Part shown: one piece after another, positions 35,901-62,531 of the stretch
Numbering within the stretch: the stretch's first letter is position 1
How the letters are laid out: the number at the start of each line of letters is the position of its first letter
Virus record (IMG/VR): IMGVR_UViG_3300023174_000039
Location: 248,001 to 312,000 of that record
Reading direction: 5' to 3' (one strand)
Length of the DNA stretch: 64,000 bases
Made by a program: the position numbers and the translations under genes
Notes under the pieces: model-generated
Databases searched by the model: none
What the model saw: only the letters and a program-made list of their open reading frames with translations
Told to the model about the DNA's origin: nothing

Positions 35901-38900
35901 TGCTGCCATGTACTGGCGCGGACGGAATCCAATCAAGCCATAACTCAGCAAATCGTTGTCATTCTCAAGATTGGCACTGTTGATACTGTATGAATTTTGT
36001 AATTGGTTGGCCTTGTTTGAGATATTGGGCAATAATCCCAATGCAATCTGATTGTAATCGCTCTTGACCCACTTGTTGAAATCAAAGTCAGTACTGGGAT
36101 CAACAATGACCTGCGCACTCCAATACTGGTCTTTGTACTTGACAATTTGTCCTTTGCTGTACTTCTTGAGACCAGACCATTCTTCAACATTGTCTTGGTT
36201 TAGAATGAAACCTTGTGCATCCACAGTGCCATTCCACTCAGTGGTTGTTACACCAACAAAATTCAATCGGCTTTGTCTAGCACCTGTAATTGGTTGATAT
36301 ATTAAATCTCCAAACACTGATTGATTGTTCAACACAATCATGTGTTCAAAATTTGTGAATCTTAAATCAGCAAAACTTAAACTTTGATCAGTCAATGGCT
36401 GTAATGTCAATGTGTTATCAAGACGAACAATATTGATATTACGAGCAGGCAGCTCACGTTTGTTTTGATCTAGTATGACATTCTCGCTGGTCTGTGTGAC
36501 AATGCTGTCAACCACTGCGCCTGGTTTGGTAATTGTCAACGCACTGGCCAGTGGGTTGAGATTGATCAGGCAATTGTTTTCCCATCCTTGCTGACTCCAA
36601 TACAAGAACTCAACAACCATCTGGTCCCAGTCTAACTGATAGCCGTTGACTCTGTCATCAAACGTGAGTCCTTGATCTGTTAGTAGTTTGCCATAGCTCA
36701 ACAAGAAATCACAAACACTGGTTTGGTTAGTAAACACATACCCATAAGGAACTTGTGCCACTGTATTTGTATAAGTGGTAGGGACTCTCACAGTAACATC
36801 GCCAACTGTATATGGCTTTAATCTACCAGCTGACTGGCTTACTAAAATATTAAAGTACGGCTGAGTGGTTGAATATCCATATACAGCATAACCGCCTTCA
36901 ACAATTTGTATCACAACTGAGCTATAAATTAGTCGATCAAATGGCTGATTTTTGTACAGCAACAAATCATAACTTTCGTCAGGAATCAACAATGTTGCAT
37001 TCAAGCTGTTGGGGCTAGATTTTTCTGTGTATAATTTGATATACTGTTTGTCGGAATAACTAGCCAGTCTATAGCACAAGCGAACATCAATGCTGGCAAG
37101 ATCTGCTTCAAGGGCAGAGGTGCTGTTTATACCAGTGATACGATTATAGTCCACAATCCAGTTAATAAAACTAGCTTTGCTTGTGCCGTCACCGTACACT
37201 TGTATGCCATTGGCATCAAGTCGATACCGGTCATTGTAAAGAAATTGATCAAACTCTGCCTGATAACGATATAAATCTCTATCAGCGTACAGTGCGTAAA
37301 ACTTAGCTGGAATTGTCAATGCATACAATCTCATGACAGCAAATGGATAAGCACTAGAGTTCCGCCATGATGATTCAACAGGACTACCGTCGCCGGCACT
37401 CCAACTCTTTTGAAATGTTGTTTCGTTGTAGTTGCCAACTACACATTCAAACGGGCTTACTAAATTGCCTTCAGTATCAACTGGTATCACTTGAGTGAGT
37501 CCTGGACGCACATAGGCTGGTAGTACATATGTTCCTGCTGGATCTGCTACAATACCTGCTTCTAAATCATCCCATAGCACCATGTTTTCAGATGTGTAAG
37601 GTCCTACACCATATACAGTTTCCCACCAGGTTGGTTTGATACTGAATCCCAGCATCTCCCAAGGAGTTTTGGCAGGATCTTGTGTGTCATAAAAGTATCT
37701 ATAGATGCCACGCCAGGAGCCAATTAAGTTTTGACCAGTAGATAGTTTGTTTTGTGATCCACTATAGTTCCAGGAGAATTCGTTGTTTACAATATAATTT
37801 TGTGTGTTGTAATCAAGTTTGTTCCAGCCCACATAACTTAAAAAATCAACATTCAATATGGAATTAATTTCTTGTGATGAGTAACCGGTGTTGCGGAATT
37901 GTCCAGGAATAACATCACTGGCATTGATAGGCACTGGGTTGCCATCAAGTTTCAAGTTGTTGTAGATTCGAGTTTCAAACTCAAGTAACACTTGGTCTCG
38001 TACGTCACCAAATACTGGGGTTTGACTACCATCATGCCCAATGATAACTTCGCTGGAGCCGGATGTGGTGTCAATTGCAGTTATTACTGGACGGAATGTT
38101 GGGTACAGACCCATCTTGGTAGGAGTGTTTGGAACAAAACTTCCGTAAGTCGCTGAGTATTCTTGAACAGAGATAACATCGCCAATGGCCAATGGCACAA
38201 GTACTGTAATGCGTGGGCCATCTGTAGCAACAGTATAATCAATGCCACGAGTTAGTAATGCTTTGTTTTTGTAAACTAACAGTCCCAGATAGTTAGATGA
38301 TGTATAATTGTAAACTTGTACTGTATCAAATACATTGGTTGTGATCAAACTTACTGTGTAATTGTTTTCAATGTACACTGACCCTGATGGCAACATGTCT
38401 GACCAATAGAACGGATTAGATTCTAATCGTCCCAGAGTAATGTTGGCCATGGCCTCTACCAATATCTCTGCAGGAGTTTCTGTGTACAAAGTTAAATTGG
38501 TAACTTCGTTCATCAATAAGTCTTTGAACTTTTGGTATTCTCGCGAATTGTACTGCAAGGCAGCAAAAATATTATATTCTTTACTACGATTAAAATATCC
38601 AGCCAGTGTCAACGGACTACTTTGTTGTAGGATAATCAATCCATAAGGGCCAATGTTTCCAAGGTCTCGAGTGTTGTTGGCACCATTGATTTTACCAGAC
38701 AGTGTAATTAAGTTTTCACATATGGATTCGTAATGCGTACGAATGGTACCCAAAGTGAATACATCGCTGTTGCCATTGAGCGGGTTGTTCTCCAAATTGA
38801 TAGGCACTTGATAAAATGCCACTTGACTTGTTTGGTCGCTTAACACCAATACTTCCACAATATCGCCAATGGCATAGGTATTATCCAACGTGATAGTAGA

Positions 38901-41804
38901 TGAGTTAGACGTGGTTTCTAAAGTGTATGTTCCTGGATCTTTAAATTTACTACCAACGTAGATTTTTACAGCTGGAACAATGCCGTCGCTTTGTGCTTGA
39001 ATATCCAGCAACAAAGGTCTACCAGTGTAGGTAAATTTAAACTGTTGTCTAACCTGAGTTGGTGTAATTGCTGTGTTCCATCCTAGCAGTCGATCATACA
39101 ATAATCTTGTGGCATACTCTCTAGGAAATCCAGAGCTGATGGACGAAGTTGTACTAACGTTATCACGCACATATAAAAATGTATCTTTGTATAGATTATT
39201 TTCAAATACAATGTCACCAACGTTGTTCAAATTCAAATACTGTAACGGAAATTGTAAAATTGGATCTAATATACCTGTAGATCCTTCGGCATAACTGAAT
39301 AATTTTGATCCAGCAAATGTTGTTGATGGGTATACTGCTTTGTTTCCAAAGCTCACCCCATTGGCGTCGTACACATTGAACAATGGTGCTTGTTGAACTT
39401 TGGTTTTCAGTTGCGCTTTGGTCCAAACAACTCCATCATACCAAAATGTAATGCCTCTAAGAGTTGAGCCATCTAGACACACAGTACTCTCGTCGACTAA
39501 TACATCACCGTCATTGGCCAGCGTCAAATTAATAACAGGCTGAGAAATTATTGGAGATATTGAATCGGGAGACACAAAATTAACAACCCAAATCTTATTT
39601 CGAACATTGGCATCTGCATCCTTGGCAAAGATAACTCGGCTGCCTTGAACAAAATTGTATCCGTCTACGGTATAACCAGTTGACCCTTCTACATTACTAA
39701 ACGCATCAGTTTCTGCAAAGTCAATGACATTGACCGGCTGTTTGCCTTCTGTACCCATGTTGTACAACCGTAGTCCAGGGCGAAATTGAATAATTGGACG
39801 TTTGGCTCGGTACTGATTGTCAATGGTAACATCTGTATTATTGTATTTTGCAGTGGCGTTGATAACATCTATATGAAACCAGCGATTGCCTCTGGTCCAG
39901 GCATTGAGATCCAAGCTGGCACGGCTGATGGTTAGATAATCCAAATCTGACGGCTCTGATGCAAATGTACTGGTATCAGCATCTACCACATATGTTTCTG
40001 GGCAGATAAAATCTGTCACTGGCAACAACTTTATGGCCGTACCAACCCCACTGATATAATATTCGTTGCCAATGTAACTTGCTGGCACCACATCTCCACG
40101 GAATACAATTTTCAACCCATTGGTAAACTCTACACCATTTGGGCTGGTATATGTTTTTTTGCCAATGATTTCATCAATGTACAAAGTAGAACTTTGTGAT
40201 TGTTCAATCAGTCTGATTCGACCAAATATTCCTGGATCTGTCCCATCTTGATAGTACAACGTATCCTGCGACGCAGTCAGCAACGGTATTTGTTTAAACA
40301 CCCCAGCATCGTTCTTAAACCATCCGGTACTGGCATAAGTGTTACCATACAAGATAGTGAACTTTTCTAGATCATTGATAGTACCTACATTGGTTAGGCT
40401 AATGTAAATAAAACCATTATTATTAATATAGTTAATCTGCCAGATATCTCGACGCTGGGACAATGGTACTTCAGTTTGTTGTGTATATAACAAACTATCA
40501 TATCCTCCCACTTGACTTGTACTGCCTTGTGACAACGGATCAAAGTATGTGGTTTTGGTCCAACCGCCTACATCAGTATCCAGTGATGTGCCTTCAAAAA
40601 TCAGTGTTCTACCATCAAGTGCAGTGATGCCATCGATACCGCCGTGAGTGGCAATAAAATCAGCCACAGTGATATTGTTGATTTGATCAAATCTCAAATC
40701 AGTCAATAAATCAACTGTGCCAATGCTGGGTAGATTATAGTAAAACTGTTGCGCAATTTTGGTAGGAGCGTTAAATGTTATGGTGCCAAGATCTTCTCCA
40801 TTATTGGTTACACCATACACATCTCTAGAACTGATATTTGGGGTAGAGGGCATTTTTCCATTGAACCCTGGCGCGGCTTGAATCCAAAAGCCTGGACCAG
40901 TTCCTGGGGTACCATCAACAATGTTCAGTTGTCCACGCATGTTTGATTGCGTGGAGCTAGAATAGTACAAGGTATCTGGGGCGTCTTGGGGCACAACAAA
41001 TGTTACCAATCCAGTAACAGCACCATTATTGGTTACACCTATACTGTAAACATTGTTTAGTCCTGTGGTTGCGGCTGTTTTAATATAGAACGGATACACA
41101 CCATTTAAATTTAAATTAAACACATAGGTGTTGCCACGAACCAAAGTCAATGTAGGATTGTTAACATAGTCAATGACATATGCACTGGTTCCAGAATTAG
41201 TCACACGATAGTTTACAGTTTCTTTATCGTTTTGTGCCACTTGAAAAGTGTAACTGCCGCCACGCACCAGATCAACTGTGGGATTATCTCCGTTAAGACC
41301 AGAGAATGTGTACACACCATTGGCTCTTGTGACTACAAAATTGTCCGATGCCGGAACTCCAGTCGCTGCCACATCTACTGCTCCTGGCCCGCCAGGTAGC
41401 CAAAAATACTGACTGAAGTTGATGAACGTATCCCAGTCAATGAATGGGTCCCAGGTATAGTATTCGCTTTCAAATAGTCTGTCAGGTCGTGCAGAATTGC
41501 CGCCTTGATATGCAATTGAATCCAGCAGGCCCGGGTAAGTGATAGCATCTTCAATGGTATTGGTATCTGGCTTGAGACTGATAATACCTGGCTCAAGTTG
41601 ATAATCAGCACGAGCTTTGGTTGGCTCTACGACATATTTTTCGTTGGGGTTAACACCTGGACCCACTGTGCGGCCAATGAATCCTTGAGTCTTTTTAAAT
41701 TTGGGCTCTTGTATCAACTGATCCAGCGTGGCCGCTAGGAACTGTTTGTTTACATCAGTCTGAAAAATTTCAGGTAAAAAATCTACGCTTCGTACTTTTG
41801 CCAT
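26994..41804 (-). CDS. Giant (4936 aa) baseplate wedge/fibre-like structural protein
   Basis: Uninterrupted 14.8-kb ORF directly downstream of the gp6-like gene. It has FG-GAP-like repeats (FGxSVxxS...VGA) and many VxVNG/DG...GxDY beta repeats. Confidence 0.8.
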   Translation of the reverse strand: MAKVRSVDFLPEIFQTDVNKQFLAATLDQLIQEPKFKKTQGFIGRTVGPGVNPNEKYVVEPTKARADYQLEPGIISLKPDTNTIEDAITYPGLLDSIAYQGGNSARPDRLFESEYYTWDPFIDWDTFINFSQYFWLPGGPGAVDVAATGVPASDNFVVTRANGVYTFSGLNGDNPTVDLVRGGSYTFQVAQNDKETVNYRVTNSGTSAYVIDYVNNPTLTLVRGNTYVFNLNLNGVYPFYIKTAATTGLNNVYSIGVTNNGAVTGLVTFVVPQDAPDTLYYSSSTQSNMRGQLNIVDGTPGTGPGFWIQAAPGFNGKMPSTPNISSRDVYGVTNNGEDLGTITFNAPTKIAQQFYYNLPSIGTVDLLTDLRFDQINNITVADFIATHGGIDGITALDGRTLIFEGTSLDTDVGGWTKTTYFDPLSQGSTSQVGGYDSLLYTQQTEVPLSQRRDIWQINYINNNGFIYISLTNVGTINDLEKFTILYGNTYASTGWFKNDAGVFKQIPLLTASQDTLYYQDGTDPGIFGRIRLIEQSQSSTLYIDEIIGKKTYTSPNGVEFTNGLKIVFRGDVVPASYIGNEYYISGVGTAIKLLPVTDFICPETYVVDADTSTFASEPSDLDYLTISRASLDLNAWTRGNRWFHIDVINATAKYNNTDVTIDNQYRAKRPIIQFRPGLRLYNMGTEGKQPVNVIDFAETDAFSNVEGSTGYTVDGYNFVQGSRVIFAKDADANVRNKIWVVNFVSPDSISPIISQPVINLTLANDGDVLVDESTVCLDGSTLRGITFWYDGVVWTKAQLKTKVQQAPLFNVYDANGVSFGNKAVYPSTTFAGSKLFSYAEGSTGILDPILQFPLQYLNLNNVGDIVFENNLYKDTFLYVRDNVSTTSSISSGFPREYATRLLYDRLLGWNTAITPTQVRQQFKFTYTGRPLLLDIQAQSDGIVPAVKIYVGSKFKDPGTYTLETTSNSSTITLDNTYAIGDIVEVLVLSDQTSQVAFYQVPINLENNPLNGNSDVFTLGTIRTHYESICENLITLSGKINGANNTRDLGNIGPYGLIILQQSSPLTLAGYFNRSKEYNIFAALQYNSREYQKFKDLLMNEVTNLTLYTETPAEILVEAMANITLGRLESNPFYWSDMLPSGSVYIENNYTVSLITTNVFDTVQVYNYTSSNYLGLLVYKNKALLTRGIDYTVATDGPRITVLVPLAIGDVISVQEYSATYGSFVPNTPTKMGLYPTFRPVITAIDTTSGSSEVIIGHDGSQTPVFGDVRDQVLLEFETRIYNNLKLDGNPVPINASDVIPGQFRNTGYSSQEINSILNVDFLSYVGWNKLDYNTQNYIVNNEFSWNYSGSQNKLSTGQNLIGSWRGIYRYFYDTQDPAKTPWEMLGFSIKPTWWETVYGVGPYTSENMVLWDDLEAGIVADPAGTYVLPAYVRPGLTQVIPVDTEGNLVSPFECVVGNYNETTFQKSWSAGDGSPVESSWRNSSAYPFAVMRLYALTIPAKFYALYADRDLYRYQAEFDQFLYNDRYRLDANGIQVYGDGTSKASFINWIVDYNRITGINSTSALEADLASIDVRLCYRLASYSDKQYIKLYTEKSSPNSLNATLLIPDESYDLLLYKNQPFDRLIYSSVVIQIVEGGYAVYGYSTTQPYFNILVSQSAGRLKPYTVGDVTVRVPTTYTNTVAQVPYGYVFTNQTSVCDFLLSYGKLLTDQGLTFDDRVNGYQLDWDQMVVEFLYWSQQGWENNCLINLNPLASALTITKPGAVVDSIVTQTSENVILDQNKRELPARNINIVRLDNTLTLQPLTDQSLSFADLRFTNFEHMIVLNNQSVFGDLIYQPITGARQSRLNFVGVTTTEWNGTVDAQGFILNQDNVEEWSGLKKYSKGQIVKYKDQYWSAQVIVDPSTDFDFNKWVKSDYNQIALGLLPNISNKANQLQNSYSINSANLENDNDLLSYGLIGFRPRQYMAALNLDDVSQVNVYSQFLGTKGTILSAELLSNANLGKESADYQIYENWAVQRAVYGANANRSFVELKLNRALLSANPSLVQVIQPQEQSQADQTILLDNVWRQSYKLTSPDFLPTTITQVTDTALPNAGYVNLEDADIATFDLGTRSTIAANLGLVSVGATVWVAKVNNYDWDIYRCVNIPGFIDHVCDNLDGTSIVNFTKPHGLSVGDRLIIKQFDTRIDGVYKVLTVQGINRVTIAYTFTPGGQTVINGVGIGFTLKTQRVRQASDIINLPYANDIQTGAKLWVDNDGTGHWEVLQKENQFSTVIELSPKLLDATEQYGQSVSQARNRFAALVGSPRYGFPTGAEKGAVYVYVKNYSDQYAPVSPVANGDAVLTLDTTGARGFGNAVEFGNQTWAVAGASKSLGPASQADVGYAAIIYRDPNLGKPGVIPYVSWQLLVSPNNTESGLFGHSVAISTDERWVYIGAPAANKVYAYGRVDWQDQFVKSRGDGVTKSFSIAQTIQINTATQLLVTLDGTQQLLGTDYTVDSGLATVTFATAPAVGVLVDIHRYNNKIIDGGNYYNVAQTSTSGSGTGAKFTIRRVRNEVGQPGSISGGVGVTAGGTGYAVGNTITFAASKFGGQANLVLTVVSVGAGGKVETFNIAYTPVTLTSTFSLNEYFFTVDNIYSFSVYVDTVLQRPGIDYTFNTSTQDMTFVNNPAAGTLISVQAQSYFEYVNTLTVAGLAADAQFGYSVTTTVDGRQVIIGCKDEDISGKVDAGSVYVFDRNVQRFDYGTDPSSTMFTVLGTVTAPVSVIVNNVFLVNQNNSIIGASNSFTVSGNDITINSDLQTGDVIEIETNQFTQMQKITKNTVTEYTNFGQSVDICVYSCSLYVGAPQDSTDGWKSGSVQRNVNQSRVYGSTVSLNQDPVLTPGHTLRVNNQDVVILFPTAEQTSLQRLAQSITETVPNVVASVSKGYLTIAVKNPASAAPGNKLQVAPGSVGSAFTTIGFNTFTYTQSIYSPYPVDFAGFGTSISIDDSAANLVVGSPRGTLYLITIFDDGTTDFDENSTIFFSEVVQSGAVYTYDYLASADETAANPGKFAFGLQITDSNVYPYDVYGASVSYVDGVLMVGASGSDATAADSSGSNYGRVFVFENATRMPAWTPIRVQQPVVDIRLLNSVFTYDRLTSARTQQFDFFDPLQGKILGAAKQNINYISAIDPAGYNVGPTNNSGNTWLADHVGQVWWDVSTVRFIDPNQDDIVYASRRWGQVFPGSTVDMYQWIQSSVPPATYTGEGKPLNVYSYTVSTKLSVDGTFNTYYYFWVKGLTTVATQQGKTLAPQTVANYIENPKASGIAYIAPVNASTVAIYNATTIIEAEDTVISVEFDREYTDNNVHVEYELIAQGKSDAFLSTNLYRKLQDSFCGVDTAGNLVPDPTLNDAERYGVQFRPRQSMFVDRFAALKNYIVRTNNVLSLYPIVENRSLLLLNSREPEPPSTTGGIVNWNLRVANLEILSFQDISLVPFGYKYLVDSDSRNNGLWTIYTVQNGQGALVGTKELVLTRVQNYDTRRYWSYVNWYRPGYNSSTKVIAEVPNYSALATITVPVGSSVKVTANAQGKFEIYLLTDLGWERVGLQDGTIEISAEIYNYALGRFGFDVEVFDAQYFDQEPVIETRKIIQAINEELFIDELALERNKALTLMFNFVLSEFSAPEWLVKTSLIDVDHNIRNLAPFQNYRRDNQEFVLDYVKEVKPYHVQIREFNLRYNGQDEYGGDVTDFDVPAYYNTSLVVPQYTSPILNIDDTTDPRYQEPYLHSTHQQDNTLSDTPPSSLVWQAWPYSQWYNHYLLNLQLIKVITGGSGYTEPPTVTLDGDATTPATLQAFLGPVNASGTASVLYVAIIDEGSGYYATPNVIFSGGNGSGARAYALMNNDLVRSFKTVIKYDRYQYHTNILTWTANVTYENGTLVRYDDQVWRAANPTGTSVTSATFNLEDWQLVPANELSGVDRTMGYYIPGVNEPGLDLPLLIDGTSYPGVQVWGDYFLGSDPTSTQLECTATSADNNQITCTNTLGLQATAPIKFLGTTIGGIEQDVNYFVKDIVDQTHFTICAKVGGFTIELTTATGSMQAISLQMLDATYSSSFRDVYLGTRYSDINIDGGKFIGMYEGYAPEELVNGSEFDTLDIRVYTRPGSDWTLYDNIAGSNGHGFQITSRRYTYSLSNTELNWNGLVENPVHLEISNVSSGIDLVPNIDYVVDWVARTVAMRSGVTSGDIINITAYELGGGSQLYRQNYVGDKVGNKLIVPVNSTEIYQAVLFVNGVYTAVNSWEPYYPASIWNQLNTYSTLDVVYTTGPTTYYRALQNVIAGIDIHNTAYWQQFVPTTLSKIALNRVYTSTDALNITILGFTTPKQYSWSTPQTEYFTVTSAINASKTVNLANSVAGTNIPNMIVEINGVRLRPYEGIEWIGDNSTTSFGLPQRGGYQQSIINPVTDITVFVDNVLQVQSFGSITGDYSVTNWNGSNTPGRQVQFVTAPDYGARILISVSVAAAYYVAGSQLQLISPPSVGSIIAVTTFNDTSQQNILTQVYQGPVVGGVVIDEPYDSTAFDTGVVNNDPGSYAYSEGIPLLSNQFDLGRLGVDASRLWVTLNGYRLFDGQDYTVQGQYVIFASGAIASSDIAVIQEFTNSIVPEAMAFRVFQDMRGVQATYRITTNSTTELVQPLSSIADIMYVLNASNLSEPDLTNGVFGVCTIGGERIMYRYRNTALNTISGLMRGTAGTAAAEHIIGTPIYDMGRGNLLGEQYQDHIIKDDTLADGSTTIFYAPSIYLPIVDPKDSSTVYIDHSIEVYVGGTRQYPITEVNTPSQYRYTVFTVDPVVPGDPYTIGVEFITDNDPYHPLLAPAAGVSVTIAQRRGYFWYGNGIVQKATTAIAGESYFINAVGNTDFTRIGAAENTVGILFTATGPGTGTGTISTVSNGIALQQTNTQAARFLRGL

Positions 41805-55956: not shown

Positions 55957-56973
55957 ATGAGTAATCTATTTAAAAAAGCCGCAATCTTCACAGACATCCA
56001 CTTTGGTCTCAAGTCAAACAGCACATTGCACAACGAAGACTGTTTGGCTTTTGTCAAATGGGCCACTGCCAAGGCCAAGGCAGAAGGCTGTGACACTTGT
56101 CTGTTTCTAGGTGATTGGCACAACAATCGATCAAGCCTAAACATTGTCACACTAAGCTACAGTCTGCGAGCATTAGAACACATGAATGCCAACTTTGATC
56201 GTGTGTTTTTCATTCCTGGCAATCATGACTTGTATTATCGTGACAAGCGTGATATACAAAGTGTAGAATGGGCCAAACACTTGCCAAACATTGAAATATG
56301 CAACGACTGGTTCAGTGATGGCAATGTTATCATTGCTCCTTGGTTGTGTGGCGACGATCATAAACGTATTCCCAAACTAAAAGGTCAGTACATGTTTGGG
56401 CATTTTGAACTGCCTGGATACATGATGAATGCCATGGTAGAGATGCCAGATCACGGAGAGATCCGCAGGGAAGACTTCAACAACTTTGATCATGTGTTCA
56501 CTGGTCACTTTCACAAACGTCAGACCAAAAAGAACATTACCTACATTGGTAACTGCTTTCCGCACAACTATGCTGATGCCGGTGACGATGATCGTGGATT
56601 GACTATTTTAGAGTGGGGGCAAGATCCGGTGTATCATGCGTGGCCCGCACAACCCAAATATCGGGTGTTAGGGTTAAGCTCGGTAATTGACAATGCTGCC
56701 ACACTGCTTGCTCCTGACATGCATGTTCGTGTACAATTAGACATTGAGATCTCATACGAAGAAGCCAACTTCATTAAAGAAACATTTATCAAGCAGTATC
56801 AACTGCGAGAAATGGCATTGATTCCTAACAAGAACTCCGGGGTTGACACAGACATGGCACCCGGAGAAGTAAAGTTTGAATCTGTTGATCAAATTGTTAC
56901 AGACCAACTCACCAACATTGAATCTGAATTTTACGATCCAAAACTGTTGCTAAAGATTTATCAAAACTTATGA
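55957..56973 (+). CDS. Recombination endonuclease subunit gp47 (Mre11/SbcD-like)
   Basis: Metallophosphoesterase motifs DIHFG, GDW, GNHD, GHFE, GHFH. Confidence 0.93.
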   Translation: MSNLFKKAAIFTDIHFGLKSNSTLHNEDCLAFVKWATAKAKAEGCDTCLFLGDWHNNRSSLNIVTLSYSLRALEHMNANFDRVFFIPGNHDLYYRDKRDIQSVEWAKHLPNIEICNDWFSDGNVIIAPWLCGDDHKRIPKLKGQYMFGHFELPGYMMNAMVEMPDHGEIRREDFNNFDHVFTGHFHKRQTKKNITYIGNCFPHNYADAGDDDRGLTILEWGQDPVYHAWPAQPKYRVLGLSSVIDNAATLLAPDMHVRVQLDIEISYEEANFIKETFIKQYQLREMALIPNKNSGVDTDMAPGEVKFESVDQIVTDQLTNIESEFYDPKLLLKIYQNL

Positions 56974-57680
56974 GATTTCAAGACACACGTTTCTGGAAAA
57001 ATTACAGTGAGTACACTCGTATTACACTGAACTCGTCTATGCGATCAACCGTTGATGCTGTAATTTACTGGCGGTTGTTAAATTATTTTAAGTTTAATAA
57101 GTTTTTAGAAATTGGGGTATATCAAGGATTAACTACTGGATTGATATTTGACACAACACCTACTGCTCATGTGACTGCAATTGATCCAACAGATCGGTTG
57201 GCATTATTTTATAAAAATTATCCAGAATACCAATCACAGTTTACTTTTATTAACCAACCAAGTCAAAAAGTTGAGTTAGGTGACACCATGTATGATTTTA
57301 TTCTAGTCGATGGCGACCATTCCTACGAGATAGTGGTAGATGATATTTTAAAATGTTTACCAAGGCTGGACACTAGTGGGGTGTTAGCAATTGACGATTA
57401 CAAACTGCCGGGGGTTGCAAAAGCAATAGAATACCTGTATAATTTAAAAACTGACTGGGTTCCATTTTTACGATCTGAACAAACTGAATTTTGGCATCAT
57501 TGCAGGTGTGATCGTGGTGACTTTTTAGATTCCTTGTTCACTGATTCAATTAGTAAATTTATTTTTATTAGAAACACAGTTGACCAATATAACAATACCA
57601 TATGCTCTGCAACCACACTAGGCATATTTACTGATCAAACTGAATACTTTGATATGGCCTTACAGCACTATAACATATGA
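56970..57680 (+). CDS. Class I SAM-dependent methyltransferase (Methyltransf_24-like)
   Basis: LEIGVYQG, AIDP, YDFILVDGDHSYE...D...L...G.LAIDDY. Confidence 0.8.
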   Translation: MRFQDTRFWKNYSEYTRITLNSSMRSTVDAVIYWRLLNYFKFNKFLEIGVYQGLTTGLIFDTTPTAHVTAIDPTDRLALFYKNYPEYQSQFTFINQPSQKVELGDTMYDFILVDGDHSYEIVVDDILKCLPRLDTSGVLAIDDYKLPGVAKAIEYLYNLKTDWVPFLRSEQTEFWHHCRCDRGDFLDSLFTDSISKFIFIRNTVDQYNNTICSATTLGIFTDQTEYFDMALQHYNI

Positions 57681-59758
57681 TCCAAATTAAAAACTTGACT
57701 GTTAAAAACTTCATGAGTGTGGGCAATGCCACACAAGGTATTGACTTTGACCGTAACGACCTTACACTTGTGCTGGGCGAAAACTTGGATCTAGGCGGTG
57801 ACGGATCACGCAATGGCACAGGCAAGACCACTATCATTAATGCGTTGAGTTATGCTTTGTATGGACAAGCACTATCAAACATTCGCAAAGATAATCTTGT
57901 GAACAAAACCAACGGCAAGAATATGTTGGTTAGTCTAGACTTTGTTGTGAACGGGCAAGAATACAAGATCGAACGTGGGCGCAAACCCAATGTGTTGCGG
58001 TTTTATGTCAACAATCAAGCGCAGGTATCTACAGACGAAGCGCAAGGCGATAGTCGAGAAACACAAGATGCAATTGAACGGATTATGAATATGAGTCATG
58101 ACATGTTCAAACATGTGCTGGCGCTAAACACTTACACCGAACCGTTCTTGAGTTTAAAAGCCAATGACCAGCGCAACATAATCGAGCAGTTGTTGGGTAT
58201 CACTTTGCTGAGTGAACGTGCAGATGCCATCAAAGAACTTAATCGACAGACCAAAGATGGCATCAGTCAAGAAGAATTTCGTATTCGTGCTGTGCAAGAA
58301 GCCAACAAACGCATCGAAGAACAGATTGAAAGTTTGAAACGCAGACAAGTACTCTGGCAGAAGAAGTACGATAGTGATGTAGCATATCTCGTGGCACAAT
58401 ATGATGATCTAGACAAGATTGATATTGAAGTAGAATTACTAGCTCACAAAGATCTGGCCTTGTGGACCACAAGAAAACAACAACAAGATGCGTATACTGC
58501 ACTTGTTGGTCGCCAAACTGCTTGGAAGCAAAAACAACAAAAAGATATCAGTGAGTTGGAATCAGGTTACAACAATCTCAGTCACATTGACATTACTGCA
58601 GAACTACAAGCACATGCGGACTTGGCTGCTCACACACAACAAGCCAAGGACATTGCTGACCTTGAAAAACTCATTGCTAGATGTGTTACCGACGAGGCAA
58701 AAGAACAGAAAACAATTGATAAGCTCAAAACCGAAATTGATGAATTAAAAAATCACAAGTGTTATGCTTGTGGGCAAGACTTTCACGACGCCAATCATGA
58801 AACAGTGCTAGCAACAAAAGAAAAGGCTCTACAAGAAGCCGCACTGCAAGCATTGAGTACCAATGGTCAGTGGATAGAAAATACAGATGCATTGGCTGCA
58901 TTAGGTGTGCTAGGTACCAAACCCACCACACACTACCGTACAGAAACAGAAGCAATTCGACATTCAAGTGAACTAGAAAATATTCAACACAAGATTGATG
59001 CCAAACGTGCAGAAACAGATCCCTATGCTGAACAACTAGCAGAACATGCCCTTGTAGAAGTCGGCACACAACCTGTTACACATTACGACACAGAGGCTCA
59101 AGCTGTTGAGCACCGCAGTCGTATGAACACATTGCTGACACAGATTGCTACCAAAGGTGAAGAGAAGGATCCTTACACAGAACAGATTGTTGAAATGCAA
59201 CAACAAGCATTGCAGACTGTGAGTTACGATACACTCAACGATCTTACCAGATTGCAAGATCATCAAGACTTCTTGCTCAAACTATTGACATCAAAAGATT
59301 CATTTGTGCGCAAGAAAATTATTGATCAGAACTTGAGTTACCTGAACGCACGACTCACACACTATCTAGATCGCATTGGATTGCCACACACTGTGAAGTT
59401 CCAGAACGATCTAAGTGTAAGCATTGAAGAACTGGGTCGTGAACTAGATTTTGATAACTTATCACGTGGTGAACGCAATCGATTAATCTTGAGTATGTCA
59501 TGGGCCTTCCGTGACGTATGGGAAAGTCTGTACTCACCAATCAACTTGTTGTTTATTGACGAGTTAATTGACAACGGTCTAGACACACAAGGCGTAGAAA
59601 ATGCCCTGGCTTTGCTGAAGAAGATGAGTCGCGAACGCCACAAGAGTATCTGGCTTGTAAGCCATAGAGACGAGCTTGCAGGGCGTGTGGAAAACATTCT
59701 CAAAGTTGTAAAAGAGAATGGCTTTACCAGCTACAACACCGACATAGAACTGGCATAA
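57677..59758 (+). CDS. Recombination ATPase subunit gp46 (Rad50/SbcC-like)
   Basis: NFMSVG, Walker A NGTGKTT, zinc hook CYAC, signature LSRGE, Walker B LLFIDE, VSH. Confidence 0.93.
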   Translation: MIQIKNLTVKNFMSVGNATQGIDFDRNDLTLVLGENLDLGGDGSRNGTGKTTIINALSYALYGQALSNIRKDNLVNKTNGKNMLVSLDFVVNGQEYKIERGRKPNVLRFYVNNQAQVSTDEAQGDSRETQDAIERIMNMSHDMFKHVLALNTYTEPFLSLKANDQRNIIEQLLGITLLSERADAIKELNRQTKDGISQEEFRIRAVQEANKRIEEQIESLKRRQVLWQKKYDSDVAYLVAQYDDLDKIDIEVELLAHKDLALWTTRKQQQDAYTALVGRQTAWKQKQQKDISELESGYNNLSHIDITAELQAHADLAAHTQQAKDIADLEKLIARCVTDEAKEQKTIDKLKTEIDELKNHKCYACGQDFHDANHETVLATKEKALQEAALQALSTNGQWIENTDALAALGVLGTKPTTHYRTETEAIRHSSELENIQHKIDAKRAETDPYAEQLAEHALVEVGTQPVTHYDTEAQAVEHRSRMNTLLTQIATKGEEKDPYTEQIVEMQQQALQTVSYDTLNDLTRLQDHQDFLLKLLTSKDSFVRKKIIDQNLSYLNARLTHYLDRIGLPHTVKFQNDLSVSIEELGRELDFDNLSRGERNRLILSMSWAFRDVWESLYSPINLLFIDELIDNGLDTQGVENALALLKKMSRERHKSIWLVSHRDELAGRVENILKVVKENGFTSYNTDIELA

Positions 59759-60768
59759 TGTTAGCTACTTGGCACTTTCACATTGAGATCTCCAGCAAGT
59801 GTACCTTGCAGTGTCCTCGTTGTGCTCGTCAAGAAGTACCCAACAGTCTTGTGAATACAGAACTAGACCTAGAATTTTTTAAACGTAATTTTACTCCAGA
59901 GTTTATCAAAAACAATGTAGAGAAGATTACGTTTTGTGGCGACGATGGTGATCCTATATATGCACATGATCTAATTCCTGTTATAGAATATATCAAAAGC
60001 GTCAAACCTGTTGAGTTTGTGATTGTCACCAATGGATCGCATAAAAAAACTGCATGGTGGACAGAACTAGGCCAATCTCTAGATTCCAGCGACAGTGTGC
60101 ATTTTAGTGTAGACGGATATGACAATGACAGCAATAACCTGTATCGTGTCAACAGTGATTATGATAGTGTTGTTGATGGCATAAAAACTTTGCGAGCATC
60201 AAGCGATTGCAAGATTGTGTGGGCCGCTATTGCTTTCAAATTCAACGAAGAACAATTAGACTCCATGAAAGAGTTTGCACAATCTATAGGTGTTGACCGG
60301 TTCCAGTTAACCAAGAGTACCAAATTTGGCAGTGTGTATCCTTCATATGGCATAAACGATCCATTGCAACCCAGTGTAAAATACATTAGCAGTACTCACC
60401 GATTTGAACGTGAGGCAACGGTGTTTACAGATACAGGATCCCAAGACTCTGTATCCCAGACAAACATACAATTATTCAAACAAACAACAAGTCGCAATGG
60501 TATTACTCCATTGTGCATGATAGGCAACAAAGGACTGTACATTGATGCCCGCGGCAGGTTATTTCCCTGCTGTTGGGTAGCTAACCGATACAATCACAAT
60601 TCAGACTGGCAACAACAGGCAACAAACTTTGATTTACACAACAAAACATTAATCAATGTACTTGCAGATACATTTTGGTCTACAGAATTTCAAACATTCA
60701 AGTGGCAAGAATGCCAAAGCAAGTGCAAAACTTCAGTAGTAGACGAGAAATACGCAACTTCTTGGTAA
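59758..60768 (+). CDS. Radical SAM protein with C-terminal SPASM/twitch-like domain
   Basis: CTLQCPRC, TNG, C...GRLFPCCW...CQSKC; paralogue of 5174..6289. Confidence 0.9.
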   Translation: MLATWHFHIEISSKCTLQCPRCARQEVPNSLVNTELDLEFFKRNFTPEFIKNNVEKITFCGDDGDPIYAHDLIPVIEYIKSVKPVEFVIVTNGSHKKTAWWTELGQSLDSSDSVHFSVDGYDNDSNNLYRVNSDYDSVVDGIKTLRASSDCKIVWAAIAFKFNEEQLDSMKEFAQSIGVDRFQLTKSTKFGSVYPSYGINDPLQPSVKYISSTHRFEREATVFTDTGSQDSVSQTNIQLFKQTTSRNGITPLCMIGNKGLYIDARGRLFPCCWVANRYNHNSDWQQQATNFDLHNKTLINVLADTFWSTEFQTFKWQECQSKCKTSVVDEKYATSW

Positions 60769-60808
60769 CGGAGATAACTATACAGCAAGGATAAATCGCA
60801 TACAACAC

Positions 60809-61237
60809 ATGACATGGCTATATCAAGATACCCCAATTGAGATGTTGCCCGATGAGTGTGTTGGATTTGTTTACTTGATTACAAATAATCTCACTGGACG
60901 CAAGTACATAGGCAAAAAATTAGCAAAATTTAGCAAAACAACATACAAGACAGTTAAGCAAAAGAATGGCATCAAGAAGAAGAAAAAGATACGATCAAAG
61001 GTCGACTCAGACTGGAGAGAGTACTATGGGTCAAGCCCAGAATTAACTTCAGACGTAATCAAACTAGGCACCGAAAACTTTACCAGAGAAATACTTTTTT
61101 ATTGCAACTCTAAATCGGAATGTAGTTACATTGAAGCAAGAGAACAATTTGCAAGAAGAGTATTAGAATCACAAGATTATTACAATGGCCACATACAAGT
61201 GCGTGTGCATGGCAGTCATATTATAGGCAAATTATGA
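60809..61237 (+). CDS. Stand-alone GIY-YIG family nuclease
   Basis: GFVYLITNNLTGRKYIGKK, YYGS, FTREIL, catalytic-type Glu in YIEAREQ, YYN. Confidence 0.8.
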   Translation: MTWLYQDTPIEMLPDECVGFVYLITNNLTGRKYIGKKLAKFSKTTYKTVKQKNGIKKKKKIRSKVDSDWREYYGSSPELTSDVIKLGTENFTREILFYCNSKSECSYIEAREQFARRVLESQDYYNGHIQVRVHGSHIIGKL

Positions 61238-61503
61238 CCAAACTTGATTGGAACCGACAACCTTGGATCAGTACAATGAACTCAGAGTACTGGACAAATC
61301 CAAAGACCGGGTTTGACAAGGCTTGGCACGAGCAACAAAAACACAAAAAAGCACAGACAGAGAAAGAAAAGCAGTTTTTAGGCATACATGCAACACACGA
61401 GTTAGATCGCATTCAGCTAGAGTACGGTCCTCATGCAGGCAAACTTATTTGTAAAACTTGTAAAAATAAATTTCTAAAGTGGCTTCCAAAGGAAGCATTT
61501 TAA
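61234..61503 (+). CDS. Small hypothetical protein, possible Zn ribbon
   Basis: ATGA overlap with the nuclease gene; H...H...CKTC motif. Confidence 0.65.
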   Translation: MTKLDWNRQPWISTMNSEYWTNPKTGFDKAWHEQQKHKKAQTEKEKQFLGIHATHELDRIQLEYGPHAGKLICKTCKNKFLKWLPKEAF

Positions 61504-61504
61504 T

Positions 61505-61900
61505 CTAACACTGAAGGTTAGCGGGCCAGTTTGTAATACCGCTGTGGAAAAACCGGGGAATAACCGGACACGTAACATATTGAAGCACTCCCGTCAGTAG
61601 ATCTGACTATCCTGAAAAATTGGAAGTGAGTCTGAGAGCAGAACCCTACGCTCAACGCTTTGATATAGTATGAATGTTAGCATACGAGAACACCGGCTAT
61701 AAAAACTTAAACACTAGGAACGAGGTTTAAGGTAGCAAGAGATTGCAATGTCGACGTAGGTTGGGAAAGGTCAGAGCCCAGTAGCACACGGTGTATAAAA
61801 ATACCTACTTCCAATGTCGTGGCTGTGACAACTCACATGAAGACAAAAACGGAACCGCGCAAAACGGTTCCGTCTGACTAAAACAATCTACATGAATACT
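61505..61900 (+). ncRNA. Candidate large structured non-coding RNA of unknown family
   Basis: Nested helices attggaagt(61619-27)/acttccaat(61807-15), tctga/tcaga and cctacg/cgtagg, plus at least six local hairpins, in the only long ORF-free gap. Strand inferred from a GAGA tetraloop and G-U pairs. Confidence 0.6.
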
Positions 61901-61929
61901 TAATCGCTTCGCTCTTGAATTAAAAAAAC

Positions 61930-61971
61930 ATTGACGAGCAAAGCGAGTCAATAGAACTTCGTAGAAGTTCT
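61930..61971. terminator. Two tandem hairpins at the convergence of the + and - operons
   Basis: attgac...gtcaat (61930-52) and agaacttc-gta-gaagttct (61953-71), abutting the stop of the nucleosidase gene. Confidence 0.5.
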
Positions 61972-62531
61972 TAAACAGTTACTCCAAGTTCAAGTAGTTT
62001 AGCAATAAAGAACTTTTCTCCATTGGATACAGATTGTTTCCAAGAGTCATGAGCTTGATCATCTGCTTGATCAGTAATGTATTTGAAGCAACGGAATTTG
62101 ACCTTGTACCGTAAACATGCCTTGGCAATTGCATATGCCTCCATATCAACTACGTCTGCAGGTATGTCAAGTTTGGGATTCATCACAAAGTTATCTCCGG
62201 TACTGCATGTGAGTCCATTGGTACCTGTGCTCAGTATGATATCATCTTCAAATGGAGTTTGTCCGTCTGCACATCCCATGGCCTGACACGTGATATCTCT
62301 TTGTACAAATTGAGTACATTCATGTAGACCGGGACCAGCAGTAATACCACCTGCTGTGCCTATATTGATAATGCGATCTGGTTGATAACGTTCGATCACT
62401 TGTGCGGCAGTTAATGCCGCATTGACCTTGCCAACCCCGGTATAGAACACATTCATCATGTGTCGTAGGTTAGGAGCCTCGCTGGGCAAGGCTATCAAGA
62501 TCACAGTTTTCATACAAAGGTATCTGGCCAA
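61971..62531 (-). CDS. mtnN: 5'-methylthioadenosine/S-adenosylhomocysteine nucleosidase (probable start 62513, MKTVILIAL)
   Basis: AL.SE, TGVGKVNAA, IINIGTAGG, STGDNF, VDMEAYAIA, KYITDQAD. Confidence 0.85.
   Translation of the reverse strand: MARYLCMKTVILIALPSEAPNLRHMMNVFYTGVGKVNAALTAAQVIERYQPDRIINIGTAGGITAGPGLHECTQFVQRDITCQAMGCADGQTPFEDDIILSTGTNGLTCSTGDNFVMNPKLDIPADVVDMEAYAIAKACLRYKVKFRCFKYITDQADDQAHDSWKQSVSNGEKFFIAKLLELGVTV

What the first reader, a model, noticed from the sequence alone, without database searches (positions are those of the whole stretch)
61505..61900. Unrecognised ~400-nt highly structured RNA candidate
Seen: the only long non-coding gap in 64 kb holds mutually compatible nested helices: attggaagt 61619-27 / acttccaat 61807-15 (9 bp), tctga 61631-35 / tcaga 61771-75 and cctacg 61645-50 / cgtagg 61755-60. 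They enclose gtatg/catac and gctat..cttaaac/gtttaag.gtagc. Further hairpins are agcgg/ccgct, ccgg/ccgg, gtcag/ctgac, ggtgt/atacc, tgtga/tcaca and acggaaccg/cggttccgt (61849-73). A-rich linkers, G-U pairs and a GAGA tetraloop suggest RNA. I cannot match it to tRNA, tmRNA, RNase P or an intron. Inference: a new large phage ncRNA (ribozyme, scaffold or replication primer).
Basis: partly seen in the sequence, partly recalled or inferred. Interest (0 to 1): 0.85.

Follow-up and report, generated by a model that had tools for sequence, protein, structure and literature searches.

The report
New large structured RNA in jumbo phages
The gap holds a real, uncatalogued RNA gene of about 395 nt whose knotted fold is kept by compensatory mutations in more than 200 related freshwater jumbo-phage contigs, usually just after a small GIY-YIG nuclease gene; what it does is still unknown.

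Summary
Window 61505-61899 (+ strand) is a genuine structured-RNA gene. No Rfam family, tRNA or tmRNA matches it, and no GenBank phage holds it. IMG/VR holds at least 98 contigs with this form (type A). At least 120 more hold a sister form (type B) at the same locus. On 53 non-redundant type A sequences, a 21-helix model with at least four pseudoknots is 93.7% canonical. 54 of its 103 pairs show double compensatory changes, against 27±2 in shuffles. G·U outnumbers A·C 404 to 101, so the + strand is the folded one.

His three long-range helices do not: the 9-bp helix is replaced by other partners. The single-sequence folding energy is unremarkable (z = -1.18).

The RNA is the last gene of the rightward unit. 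It follows a catalytic-domain-only SegE-type GIY-YIG gene in about 92% of loci. It also occurs after other genes, and one identical GIY-YIG protein precedes both RNA types. I therefore read it as an independent trans-acting RNA rather than a proven nuclease partner.

One feature is unexplained. Two 7-nt cores 55 nt apart (61835-41 and 61890-96) flank a hairpin and are identical in 179/179 loci, across ten sequence variants.

The parts
61505..61899 (+). Type A structured RNA gene: conserved block from the 5' CUAACA to the end of repeat core 2
   Evidence: Conservation starts and stops at these positions in 53 non-redundant homologues. The 21-helix model is 93.7% canonical, with 54/103 pairs showing double changes.
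61505..61510 (+). PKa 5' strand (CUAACA), pseudoknot with the P9 loop at 61675-80
   Evidence: 6 bp, 100% canonical, 3 pairs with double changes.
61516..61519 (+). P1 5' strand (GGUU), closing helix with 61876-79
   Evidence: 100% canonical; only G·U/G-C alternation, no double change.
61520..61543 (+). P2 hairpin (61520-24/61539-43) with a 14-nt loop
   Evidence: 100% canonical. Loop invariance is partly by construction, because the 22-mer used to fetch the loci lies here.
61545..61549 (+). Pd 5' strand (UGGAA), pairs with 61809-13
   Evidence: 99% canonical but invariant, so there is no covariation test.
61553..61567 (+). P3 hairpin (CCGG/CCGG)
   Evidence: 4/4 pairs with double changes.
61577..61666 (+). 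Domain closed by P4 (61577-83/61660-66). It holds P5 (61587-90/61628-31), P6 (61593-97/61603-07), P7 (61610-12/61622-24) and P8 (61636-39/61650-53).
   Evidence: 95-100% canonical. Compensatory cells: P4 8, P5 6, P6 63, P7 4, P8 29.
61668..61685 (+). P9 hairpin; its loop UGUUAG is the PKa partner
   Evidence: 5/5 pairs with double changes.
61690..61794 (+). Domain closed by P10 (61690-95/61789-94) and P11 (61696-99/61782-85). It holds P12 (61706-12/61725-31) and P13 (61735-38/61743-46).
   Evidence: P11 4/4 and P12 7/7 pairs with double changes. P10 and P13 are kept through indels and register shifts: 75% and 73% canonical in fixed columns.
61753..61779 (+). Knotted core: PKp 61753-55/61770-72, PKq 5' strand 61756-60 (partner 61804-08), PKr 61763-65/61777-79
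   Evidence: 99-100% canonical. Compensatory cells: PKp 51, PKr 14. PKq shows UA to CG double changes.
61804..61813 (+). CCUACUUCCA: 3' strands of PKq and Pd.
61816..61844 (+). Unit U1, folded on itself as P14 (61816-20/61840-44 and 61824-28/61833-37). It contains repeat core 1 at 61835-41.
   Evidence: The hairpin is kept in shifting registers. The core is identical to core 2 in 89/89 loci.
61849..61873 (+). P15 hairpin between the two units
   Evidence: 96% canonical, G·U 33 against A·C 12. On the - strand it scores as a terminator-like site.
61871..61899 (+). Unit U2, an imperfect direct repeat of U1. Its 5' part is the P1 3' strand (61876-79). Repeat core 2 lies at 61890-96.
60809..61237 (+). 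SegE-type GIY-YIG gene, 142 aa, catalytic domain only. Usual upstream neighbour of the RNA.
   Evidence: PF19835, E = 6e-33, residues 3-129; phrog_447. Lies upstream of 83/88 type A and 95/105 type B RNAs.
60774..60782 (+). ATAACTATA motif about 30 nt before the GIY-YIG ATG (left edge of the GIY-YIG block)
   Evidence: Only copy in the window. Conserved in relatives directly after the stop codon of different upstream genes.
61234..61503 (+). ORF89, overlapping the GIY-YIG stop (ATGA). An optional gene between the GIY-YIG gene and the RNA.
   Evidence: Present in 39/83 type A loci and 0/95 type B loci. 53% aa identity to L015, against 85% nt identity for the RNA.
61482..61496 (+). Terminator-like hairpin plus T-run, ending 8 nt before the RNA
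   Evidence: a consensus match only.
61904..61970 (.). Hairpins between the RNA and the convergent nucleosidase stop (61931-51 and 61954-70). Shared by type A and type B loci; not part of the RNA core.
   Evidence: Homology with type B loci resumes at 61885. Both hairpins covary.
61971..62531 (-). Convergent PNP_UDP_1 nucleosidase gene, the downstream boundary

Best explanation
Shown. Window 61505-61899 is the gene of a new large structured RNA, about 395 nt long. It is read from the + strand as the last element of the rightward gp46(SbcC-like)/radical-SAM gene block. It folds into three helical domains tied together by pseudoknots:
- the 5' end to the P9 loop
- a GAC/GUAGG/GGG knot at 61753-79
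- a shared CCUACUUCCA strand
- a 5'/3' closing helix.
It belongs to a family with at least two 5'-domain types (A and B) that share a homologous 3' module.

Inferred.
- It acts in trans through its three-dimensional shape, as a ribozyme-sized or protein-scaffolding RNA. It is not an intron, a leader or a terminator.
- The SegE-type GIY-YIG gene in front of it is a neighbour that has settled next to a conserved gene, the way free-standing Seg endonucleases of T4 sit beside conserved genes (own knowledge). It is not an obligatory subunit.
- The 3' module shows the same 7-nt word twice: once folded into hairpin P14, and once single-stranded at the 3' end. I infer that both copies are read by one and the same partner, most simply a nucleic acid that base-pairs with them. 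No partner was found.
For: Real RNA:
- 103 pairs are 93.7% canonical. 54 pairs and 367 cells show double changes, against 27±2.3 pairs and 95±7.6 cells in shuffles, and 33-40% canonical when partners are slid.
- RNAalifold finds 22, 23 and 33 compensated pairs on three alignments.
- G·U 404 against A·C 101.
- There is no + strand ORF of 30 aa or more, and the alignment has 1-nt indels.
- The RNA is 85% identical to L015, while ORF89 is 53% and the nucleosidase 66% identical in aa.

New: no Rfam, tRNA or tmRNA match. No GenBank phage holds it. Five literature searches found no description.

Family: at least 98 type A and at least 120 type B contigs. A covariance model of the type A 3' module finds type B modules full-length at the right place, E = 0.002-0.007.

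Independent gene:
- About 8% of the RNAs have no GIY-YIG within 1.6 kb and directly follow other genes, including a PDDEXK_15 endonuclease.
- Unrelated genes of 250-360 aa can sit between the GIY-YIG gene and the RNA.
- One identical GIY-YIG protein precedes both RNA types, and the type changes 24 times on the GIY-YIG tree.
- GIY-YIG homologues in 465 GenBank phage records match; in the two regions inspected (Melnitz-3 and S-SSM7) no such RNA follows them, and neither RNA type matches any GenBank phage.

Not a leader: the downstream gene is convergent in 31/56 type A and 76/87 type B loci.

Two-copy word: identical in 89/89 and 90/90 loci across 6 and 4 variants. MI between the copies is 0.92-1.02 bit, against a background of 0.09-0.16.
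Against: - No transcript data exist. The promoter and the 3' end are not defined; only a terminator-like hairpin lies just upstream.
- The single-sequence energy is ordinary.
- The 92% adjacency to a nuclease gene that lacks a DNA-binding domain is stronger than the synteny of any other neighbour. A functional link therefore cannot be dismissed.
- No complementary partner for the repeated word was found within -900 to +600 nt.
- The loci were fetched with exact 22-mers, so invariance in those stretches, and the family counts, are biased by ascertainment.
- My shuffle control ignores phylogeny.
Confidence: 0.5

Rival explanations
1. The RNA is the partner of the upstream nuclease: a scaffold, guide or specificity subunit. 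On this reading the DNA-binding-domain-less GIY-YIG protein (in some phages a PDDEXK endonuclease) works as a ribonucleoprotein, by analogy with the HEARO RNA, which turned out to be the IscB guide RNA (own knowledge).
For: - Same strand and 0-50 nt spacing in most loci: 83/88 type A and 95/105 type B.
- 76/89 GIY-YIG downstream regions hit an RNA profile, and most of the rest carry the module about 1.2 kb further on.
- The Pfam catalytic-domain model covers residues 3-129 of the 142-aa protein.
- In L200, L221 and L147 another endonuclease family takes the same position.
- Sequence beyond 61899 varies between loci, as a guide would.
Against: - One identical protein is found with both type A and type B RNA, and the type switches 24 times on the protein tree.
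- Unrelated genes lie between the nuclease gene and the RNA.
- Some RNAs have no nuclease gene within 1.6 kb.
- Homologous proteins occur in 465 GenBank phage records; the two regions inspected lack the RNA.
- MI between the repeated cores and the GIY-YIG columns is at background.
Confidence: 0.2
2. It is a cis-acting 3' end of the rightward operon. It would be a stabilising or processing structure, or an insulator against convergent transcription, with P15 and the downstream hairpins acting as terminators.
For: - It is always the last element of the + strand unit and mostly faces a convergent gene.
- P15 scores as a - strand terminator.
- Covarying hairpins lie at 61931-70.
Against: - About 395 nt, 21 helices and several pseudoknots with conserved joining strands are far more than 3'-end protection needs.
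- The RNA stays the same while the upstream gene changes.
- P15 has no U-run on the + strand, and its A-run is not conserved.
Confidence: 0.12
3. The 3' module acts as DNA. Two identical direct repeats flanking a hairpin could form slipped-strand or hairpin DNA. Such DNA could serve as a site for the neighbouring structure-specific nucleases (gp46/47 of SbcCD type, or the GIY-YIG protein), or for replication or recombination.
For: - Identity of direct repeats, rather than complementarity, is what slipped pairing needs.
- The locus lies beside recombination-nuclease genes.
Against: - No deletion-hybrid or triplicated alleles were found in IMG/VR.
- P15 shows G·U well above A·C, as expected for RNA.
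- The rest of the element clearly evolves as RNA.
- This idea covers only about 85 of the 395 nt.
Confidence: 0.08
4. It is a self-splicing intron (group I or II) carrying, or following, a GIY-YIG homing endonuclease gene, as in the T4 td intron with I-TevI (own knowledge).
For: The size, the pseudoknots and a GIY-YIG gene next door.
Against: - No match to the intron models even at E<=10.
- The flanking ORFs are complete and differ between loci, so there are no exons to join.
- The helix order does not map onto P3-P9.
Confidence: 0.02

Closest known systems
GOLLD and ROOL (large ornate RNAs of phages and prophages; Rfam; cryo-EM study bioRxiv 10.1101/2024.12.08.627333, found)
   Same: A large phage-borne non-coding RNA, with many covarying helices and pseudoknots, known only from sequence comparison, of unknown function.
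   Different: There is no sequence or structure match. This RNA is shorter, about 395 nt against roughly 580-800 nt (own knowledge). It is not next to tRNA genes, since the window has none. It comes in types with swapped 5' domains.
HEARO RNA / IscB omega-RNA and TnpB omega-RNA (OMEGA systems)
   Same: A conserved structured RNA directly beside a small nuclease gene on the same strand, with variable sequence beyond one end of the scaffold.
   Different: The nuclease here is GIY-YIG (or PDDEXK), not RuvC/HNH. No Rfam match. No transposon ends. The RNA also occurs without the nuclease, and one protein goes with two RNA types.
Free-standing Seg homing endonucleases of T4 beside conserved genes, e.g. 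segB in the tRNA cluster (own knowledge)
   Same: A small GIY-YIG gene with its own upstream motif, wedged between a variable upstream gene and a conserved RNA gene, with presence/absence polymorphism.
   Different: Seg proteins carry a C-terminal DNA-binding part (own knowledge); this 142-aa protein does not. The family (phrog_447) is widespread in Kyanoviridae at other positions.
T4 gene 60 translational bypass element with mobA (own knowledge)
   Same: Two matching sites flank a gap of about 50 nt that contains a hairpin, next to a homing-endonuclease gene. Here the 7-nt cores lie 55 nt apart around P15.
   Different: No ORF runs through the site. The match here is 7-9 nt, not one codon.
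Group I introns with GIY-YIG ORFs (I-TevI in the td intron)
   Same: A ribozyme-sized pseudoknotted RNA in a T4-like phage with a GIY-YIG gene.
   Different: No exons, no model match and a different helix order.

Membership tests
Group I intron | Match to the Rfam covariance model (RF00028) | tested here: not met
   No hit at gathering score or at E<=10, in the window or in type B loci.
Group I intron | Interrupts a gene whose exons join to an intact product | tested here: not met
   The flanking ORFs are complete. The upstream gene differs between loci, and the downstream gene is mostly convergent.
Group I intron | Core helix order P3-P4-P5-P6-P7-P3'-P8-P7' | tested here: not met
   The covariation-supported order is different: PKp-PKq-PKr-PKp'-PKr' ... 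PKq', with no hairpin between the knot strands.
Group I intron | Self-splicing with guanosine | not testable with these tools
   Needs an in vitro assay.
tmRNA / tRNA | tRNA-like domain and tag reading frame | tested here: not met
   ARAGORN finds nothing in the window. No Rfam hit.
RNase P RNA | Match to any Rfam RNase P model | tested here: not met
   No hit at E<=10.
IscB/TnpB omega-RNA (OMEGA) | Adjacent RuvC-type IscB/IsrB/TnpB gene | tested here: not met
   The neighbour is PF19835 GIY-YIG. In some relatives it is PDDEXK_15.
IscB/TnpB omega-RNA (OMEGA) | Variable guide at one end of a conserved scaffold, matching a target | tested here: inconclusive
   Sequence after 61899 varies between loci, but no target is known and none was found in cis.
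GOLLD / ROOL | Match to the Rfam models; tRNA genes nearby | tested here: not met
Gene-60-type bypass element | Matching sites flanking a hairpin-containing gap of about 50 nt | tested here: met
   Cores 61835-41 and 61890-96 are identical in 89/89 loci, with P15 between them.
Gene-60-type bypass element | Lies inside a translated reading frame | tested here: not met
   No + strand ORF of 30 aa or more lies in 61505-61900. A 14-codon frame starting in core 1 is not conserved.
Free-standing Seg-type homing endonuclease beside a target gene (arrangement of the neighbour gene) | GIY-YIG catalytic domain | tested here: met
   PF19835, E = 6e-33.
Free-standing Seg-type homing endonuclease beside a target gene (arrangement of the neighbour gene) | Presence/absence at a fixed site next to a conserved gene | tested here: met
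   The RNA occurs with and without the gene. The left edge of the GIY-YIG block is conserved after different upstream genes.
Free-standing Seg-type homing endonuclease beside a target gene (arrangement of the neighbour gene) | Separate DNA-binding domain | tested here: not met
   The protein has 142 aa and the catalytic model covers residues 3-129. No solved relative is informative.
Free-standing Seg-type homing endonuclease beside a target gene (arrangement of the neighbour gene) | Cuts the endonuclease-free allele | not testable with these tools
   Needs a cleavage assay.
Intrinsic terminator | GC-rich hairpin followed by a U-run on the transcribed strand | tested here: not met
   P15 has no U-run on the + strand. 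It scores only on the - strand, and the corresponding A-run is not conserved.

The most novel reading that the evidence does not exclude
The RNA is the programmable part of a new mobile or defence-type system. Its two identical 7-9-nt words would be an address read by base pairing. That address would direct the neighbouring domain-poor nuclease (GIY-YIG, or PDDEXK in some phages). Alternatively, it would mark matching take-off and landing sites for an RNA-level excision or 'hop' across the 55-nt hairpin module. Either way, a rule of 'two copies must be identical', kept through at least ten sequence variants, would be a new kind of RNA specificity device.
Probability: 0.12. Interest if true: 0.95.

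Novelty: categorically new. Interest (0 to 1): 0.8.

Why it matters
Structured RNAs above 300 nt with many pseudoknots are few. Almost every one that has been understood turned out to be a ribozyme, a ribonucleoprotein core or a guide RNA.

This one is abundant: more than 200 contigs of freshwater jumbo phages. It has a well-constrained fold that could go straight to probing or cryo-EM. It sits beside a nuclease gene that lacks a DNA-binding domain.

It also carries a clean and so far unexplained genetic rule: two direct 7-nt words must stay identical. That rule gives a direct experimental handle, namely mutating one word, the other, or both. If the RNA proves to direct a GIY-YIG nuclease, that would be a new class of RNA-dependent nuclease. 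If not, it is still a new RNA family for Rfam and a marker for this phage clade.

Tried and rejected
- Rfam at gathering score and at E<=10, on the window and on relatives: only chance miRNA/CRISPR-repeat hits below threshold.
- ARAGORN: nothing.
- blastn of both RNA types against GenBank phages: no match.
- Cellular genomes: one 1.6-kb contig in a Flavobacteriales MAG, probably a mis-binned phage contig.
- Coding: no + strand ORF. The - strand ORFs of 35-48 aa are mechanical.
- nhmmer, type A against type B: not significant, E = 0.11. Only the covariance model of the 3' module linked them.
- Search for a cis partner of the repeated core: an exact or G·U complement within -900 to +600 nt, and MI against all columns, found none.
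- Alternative pairing of the P14 5' strand with unit 2: fails in several variants.
- Third copies of the core: only the GIY-YIG start-codon context and an invariant type B stretch, neither of which covaries.
- Genome-wide motif: 10 matches against 7.7 expected.
- Deletion or triplication alleles: the 4 hits were chance matches in coding DNA.
- The ATAACTATA motif as a general phage promoter: only one copy in 64 kb.
- Pfam and PHROGs on the genes of 258-343 aa directly upstream of the RNA in three GIY-less loci (homologues lie between GIY-YIG and RNA elsewhere): no family.
- Five literature searches for a GIY-YIG-associated RNA: nothing.
- The catalogue of 10,006 viral candidate RNAs (PMC10690425) may contain this RNA unnamed. 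Its supplement is not held, so this could not be checked.
- I did not use the count of structure pairs. The 512-column structure string would have had to be typed, so the same counts and controls were computed in a script.
Full report
WHAT IS THERE

The window is part of IMG/VR contig 3300023174_000039, a 331.7-kb jumbo phage. Its SbcC/gp46-like protein is closest to that of Pseudomonas phage PA5oct, at 45% identity.

Gene order around the finding:
- + strand: a methyltransferase, gp46-like, a radical-SAM protein (59758-60768), a 142-aa SegE-type GIY-YIG protein (60809-61237), and ORF89 (61234-61503).
- A 467-nt gap.
- Then the stop codon of a convergent PNP_UDP_1 nucleosidase gene (61971-62531, - strand).

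The gap is the largest between ORFs of at least 80 aa in the window.

FIRST TESTS ON THE SINGLE SEQUENCE

Rfam 15 gives nothing at gathering score over the whole window. At E<=10 over 61200-62100 it gives only chance-level hits. ARAGORN finds no tRNA or tmRNA.

The minimum free energy is not unusual: z = -1.18 on the + strand and -0.77 on the - strand. On this evidence alone the finding would be weak.

RELATIVES

No GenBank phage matches at the DNA level. IMG/VR loci fetched through the nucleosidase and through the GIY-YIG protein (at least 600 hits, best 80 kept) show two things.

First, L014/L015 carry the same element at 85% nt identity. In the same loci ORF89 is 53% and the nucleosidase 66% identical in aa.

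Second, closer relatives of the window (nucleosidase 88-97% identical) carry, at the same place, an unrelated-looking ORF-less block of 340-410 nt, which I call type B. Type B is itself 75-98% conserved.

A profile search shows about 20 further loci that have the type B 3' half joined to yet another 5' half. The only hit in 185,579 cellular genomes is a 1.6-kb contig of a MAG.

IT IS A STRUCTURED RNA

RNAalifold finds compensated pairs on three alignments:
- 22 on ten type A sequences
- 23 on ten type B sequences
- 33 of 65 predicted pairs on 53 non-redundant type A sequences (alignment A4).

I then searched A4 for all runs of at least 3 antiparallel columns that are at least 90% canonical and carry double changes. 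From these I assembled a 21-helix model in window coordinates and scored it:
- 103 pairs, 93.7% of 5264 cells canonical.
- 54 pairs and 367 cells with changes on both sides.
- Column shuffles give 27±2.3 pairs and 95±7.6 cells. Sliding the 3' partner by 1-3 columns gives 33-40% canonical and 15-25 pairs.
- G·U cells outnumber A·C cells 404 to 101. The + strand, the strand of the GIY-YIG gene, is therefore the one that folds.

No + strand ORF of 30 aa or more exists, and the alignment has 1-nt indels. Two caveats apply. The shuffle ignores phylogeny. Stretches inside the 22-mers used for retrieval are invariant by construction.

THE FOLD

- PKa: the 5' CUAACA (61505-10) pairs with the loop of hairpin P9 (61675-80). 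It has three covarying pairs.
- P1 (61516-19/61876-79) closes the molecule. It shows only G·U/G-C alternation.
- P2 and P3 are hairpins.
- A first domain is closed by P4 (61577-83/61660-66) and holds P5 to P8.
- A second domain is closed by P10/P11 and holds P12, P13 and a compact knot: PKp 61753-55/61770-72 (51 compensatory cells), PKr 61763-65/61777-79, and PKq 61756-60/61804-08.
- The strand CCUACUUCCA (61804-13) is shared between PKq and Pd (61545-49).

His hairpins agcgg/ccgct, ccgg/ccgg, gtcag/ctgac, gtatg/catac, cttaaac/gtttaag, tgtga/tcaca and acggaaccg/cggttccgt are real. His long-range helices are not supported:
- The 9-bp helix 61619-27/61807-15 is 84% canonical, with 34 A·C cells and one compensatory cell. 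When its 5' strand changes (GGAAG to GCAAG, GGUCG or GGCCG), the 3' strand does not follow. Instead the local UCC at 61610-12 does (P7).
- tctga/tcaga: 85% canonical, 2 compensatory cells.
- cctacg/cgtagg: 67%, none.
- gctat/gtagc and ggtgt/atacc are displaced by P11/P13 and by P10/PKq.

TYPE A AND TYPE B ARE ONE FAMILY AT THE 3' END

nhmmer does not link the two types (E = 0.11). A covariance model built from the last 110 nt of 32 type A sequences does. It finds type B modules full-length at the expected position: 27 bits, E = 0.002-0.007 for the best five, with a further ten at the right place at a weaker E. E-values from this short calibration are rough.

Both types end with the same plan: unit 1, a strong hairpin, then unit 2. 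Type B has its own covarying helices.

THE UNEXPLAINED RULE

Units U1 (61816-44) and U2 (61871-99) are imperfect direct repeats on either side of P15. U1 folds on itself as P14. The 5' part of U2 is the P1 strand, and its 3' part ends the conserved block.

A 7-nt core is identical in the two units in 89/89 type A loci across six variants: ACATGAA 76, GCATAAT 4, ACATAAA 3, ACAGAAA 3, GCATGAA 2 and ACATAAT 1. The same holds in 90/90 type B loci, with all four combinations of two A/G sites (36, 20, 19 and 15 loci). The flanks stay different: CUC before core 1 and UCU before core 2.

Mutual information between the two copies is 0.92-1.02 bit. To every other column it averages 0.09-0.16, with a maximum of 0.58; this covers the GIY-YIG gene, the RNA body, the module itself and the flanks. 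The alleles are therefore nearly unlinked to their surroundings yet always equal to each other.

What I excluded:
- a complementary cis strand
- alternative pairing with the P14 5' strand
- a covarying third copy
- a genome-wide motif
- deletion or triplication alleles.

A common reader acting in trans, an excision or hop between matching sites, and slipped DNA all remain open.

RELATION TO THE GIY-YIG GENE

Of the RNA loci with at least 500 nt of upstream sequence, 83/88 type A and 95/105 type B loci have the gene upstream on the same strand. It is mostly 0-50 nt away. Otherwise it lies behind ORF89 (39 type A loci) or behind an insert of 850-1000 nt. Conversely, 76/89 GIY-YIG downstream regions hit an RNA profile, and several of the rest carry the module about 1.2 kb further on.

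The protein is only a catalytic domain: the Pfam model covers residues 3-129 of 142. It belongs to phrog_447. The gene block starts with a motif, (G)GCATAACTATA, that occurs once in the window. In relatives this motif directly follows the stop codon of different upstream genes.

Several results argue against an obligatory partnership:
- About 8% of the RNAs lack the gene within 1.6 kb and follow other genes. In L200, L221 and L147 this is a PDDEXK_15 endonuclease.
- Unrelated genes can separate the two.
- One identical GIY-YIG protein precedes both type A and type B.
- The RNA type changes 24 times on a tree of 129 proteins, against 38.2±2.6 for shuffled labels.
- Homologues at 38-48% identity match in 465 GenBank phage records, mostly Kyanoviridae. 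In the two regions inspected (Melnitz-3 and S-SSM7) no such RNA follows the gene, and neither RNA type matches any GenBank phage.

The RNA is not a leader: the next gene is convergent in 31/56 type A and 76/87 type B loci.

READING

Shown: a new family of large, pseudoknotted RNA genes, read from the + strand, specific to a clade of freshwater jumbo phages.

Inferred, with about even odds: it acts in trans through its shape and is independent of the nuclease gene. That gene sits beside it as Seg-type endonucleases sit beside conserved genes in T4 (own knowledge).

The ribonucleoprotein reading keeps about 0.2. The reasons are the tight adjacency, the missing DNA-binding domain, and a second endonuclease family found in the same slot. 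The 3'-UTR, DNA-element and intron readings are weaker; the reasons are given with each rival.

NOVELTY

None of the 4227 Rfam families matches. No GenBank phage holds the RNA. Five full-text searches found no description. A catalogue of 10,006 unnamed viral candidate RNAs (PMC10690425) could include it, but this could not be checked.

Noticed in passing
window 26994-41804 (-): A single ORF of 4936 aa, followed by ORFs of 1155 and 1100 aa on the same strand.
   Followed up: no
window 60774-60782; L023-L102 about 30 nt upstream of the GIY-YIG ATG: The motif (G)GCATAACTATA has one copy in the window. It is conserved at the left edge of the GIY-YIG block, directly after the stop of different upstream genes. 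AGGCA also recurs at the 5' edge of the RNA in loci without the GIY-YIG gene.
   Followed up: partly
window 61234-61503 (+): ORF89 overlaps the GIY-YIG stop by ATGA. It has a His/Cys-rich C-terminus and no Pfam or PHROG family. It is present in 39/83 type A loci and in no type B locus.
   Followed up: partly
L004:4640-4976:- and about 120 other loci: Type B RNA occupies the same locus in the closest relatives of the window phage. It has its own covarying fold and a conserved GGGGGUACCGGUCAACCGCCUCC stretch. A third type joins another 5' half to the type B 3' half.
   Followed up: partly
L200:1209-1718:+ (also L221, L147): A PDDEXK_15 endonuclease gene (phrog_244) lies directly upstream of the type B RNA, where the GIY-YIG gene usually is.
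   Followed up: partly
L159:6954-7985, L122:7780-8556, L177:3433-4443: Genes of 258-343 aa with no Pfam or PHROG family lie directly upstream of the RNA in these GIY-less loci. In other loci (e.g. L183, L130, L162) homologous genes lie between the GIY-YIG gene and the RNA.
   Followed up: partly
window 56970-57680, 59758-60768, 61971-62531: A Methyltransf_24 gene, a radical-SAM gene and a PNP_UDP_1 (MTA/SAH-type) nucleosidase gene cluster around the RNA. This may be a nucleotide- or nucleic-acid-modification module.
   Followed up: no
window 61931-61951 and 61954-61970: Two covarying hairpins lie between the RNA and the nucleosidase stop. They are shared by type A and type B loci and are probably terminators for the convergent units.
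   Followed up: partly
window 61837-61881: A 14-codon frame (MKTKTEPRKTVPSD) starts at the ATG inside core 1 and runs through P15. Its start and its stop are lost in several relatives, so it is not a gene.
   Followed up: yes
L323 (CAIUKX010000570.1): The only hit of the RNA in a cellular genome is a 1.6-kb contig binned into a Flavobacteriales MAG. It is probably a mis-binned phage fragment.
   Followed up: no
window 60809-61237; GenBank phages: Homologues of this GIY-YIG protein are labelled 'NAD synthetase' in many cyanophage records (T4-like gene cluster 213; phrog_447). The Pfam match shows this label is wrong.
   Followed up: partly
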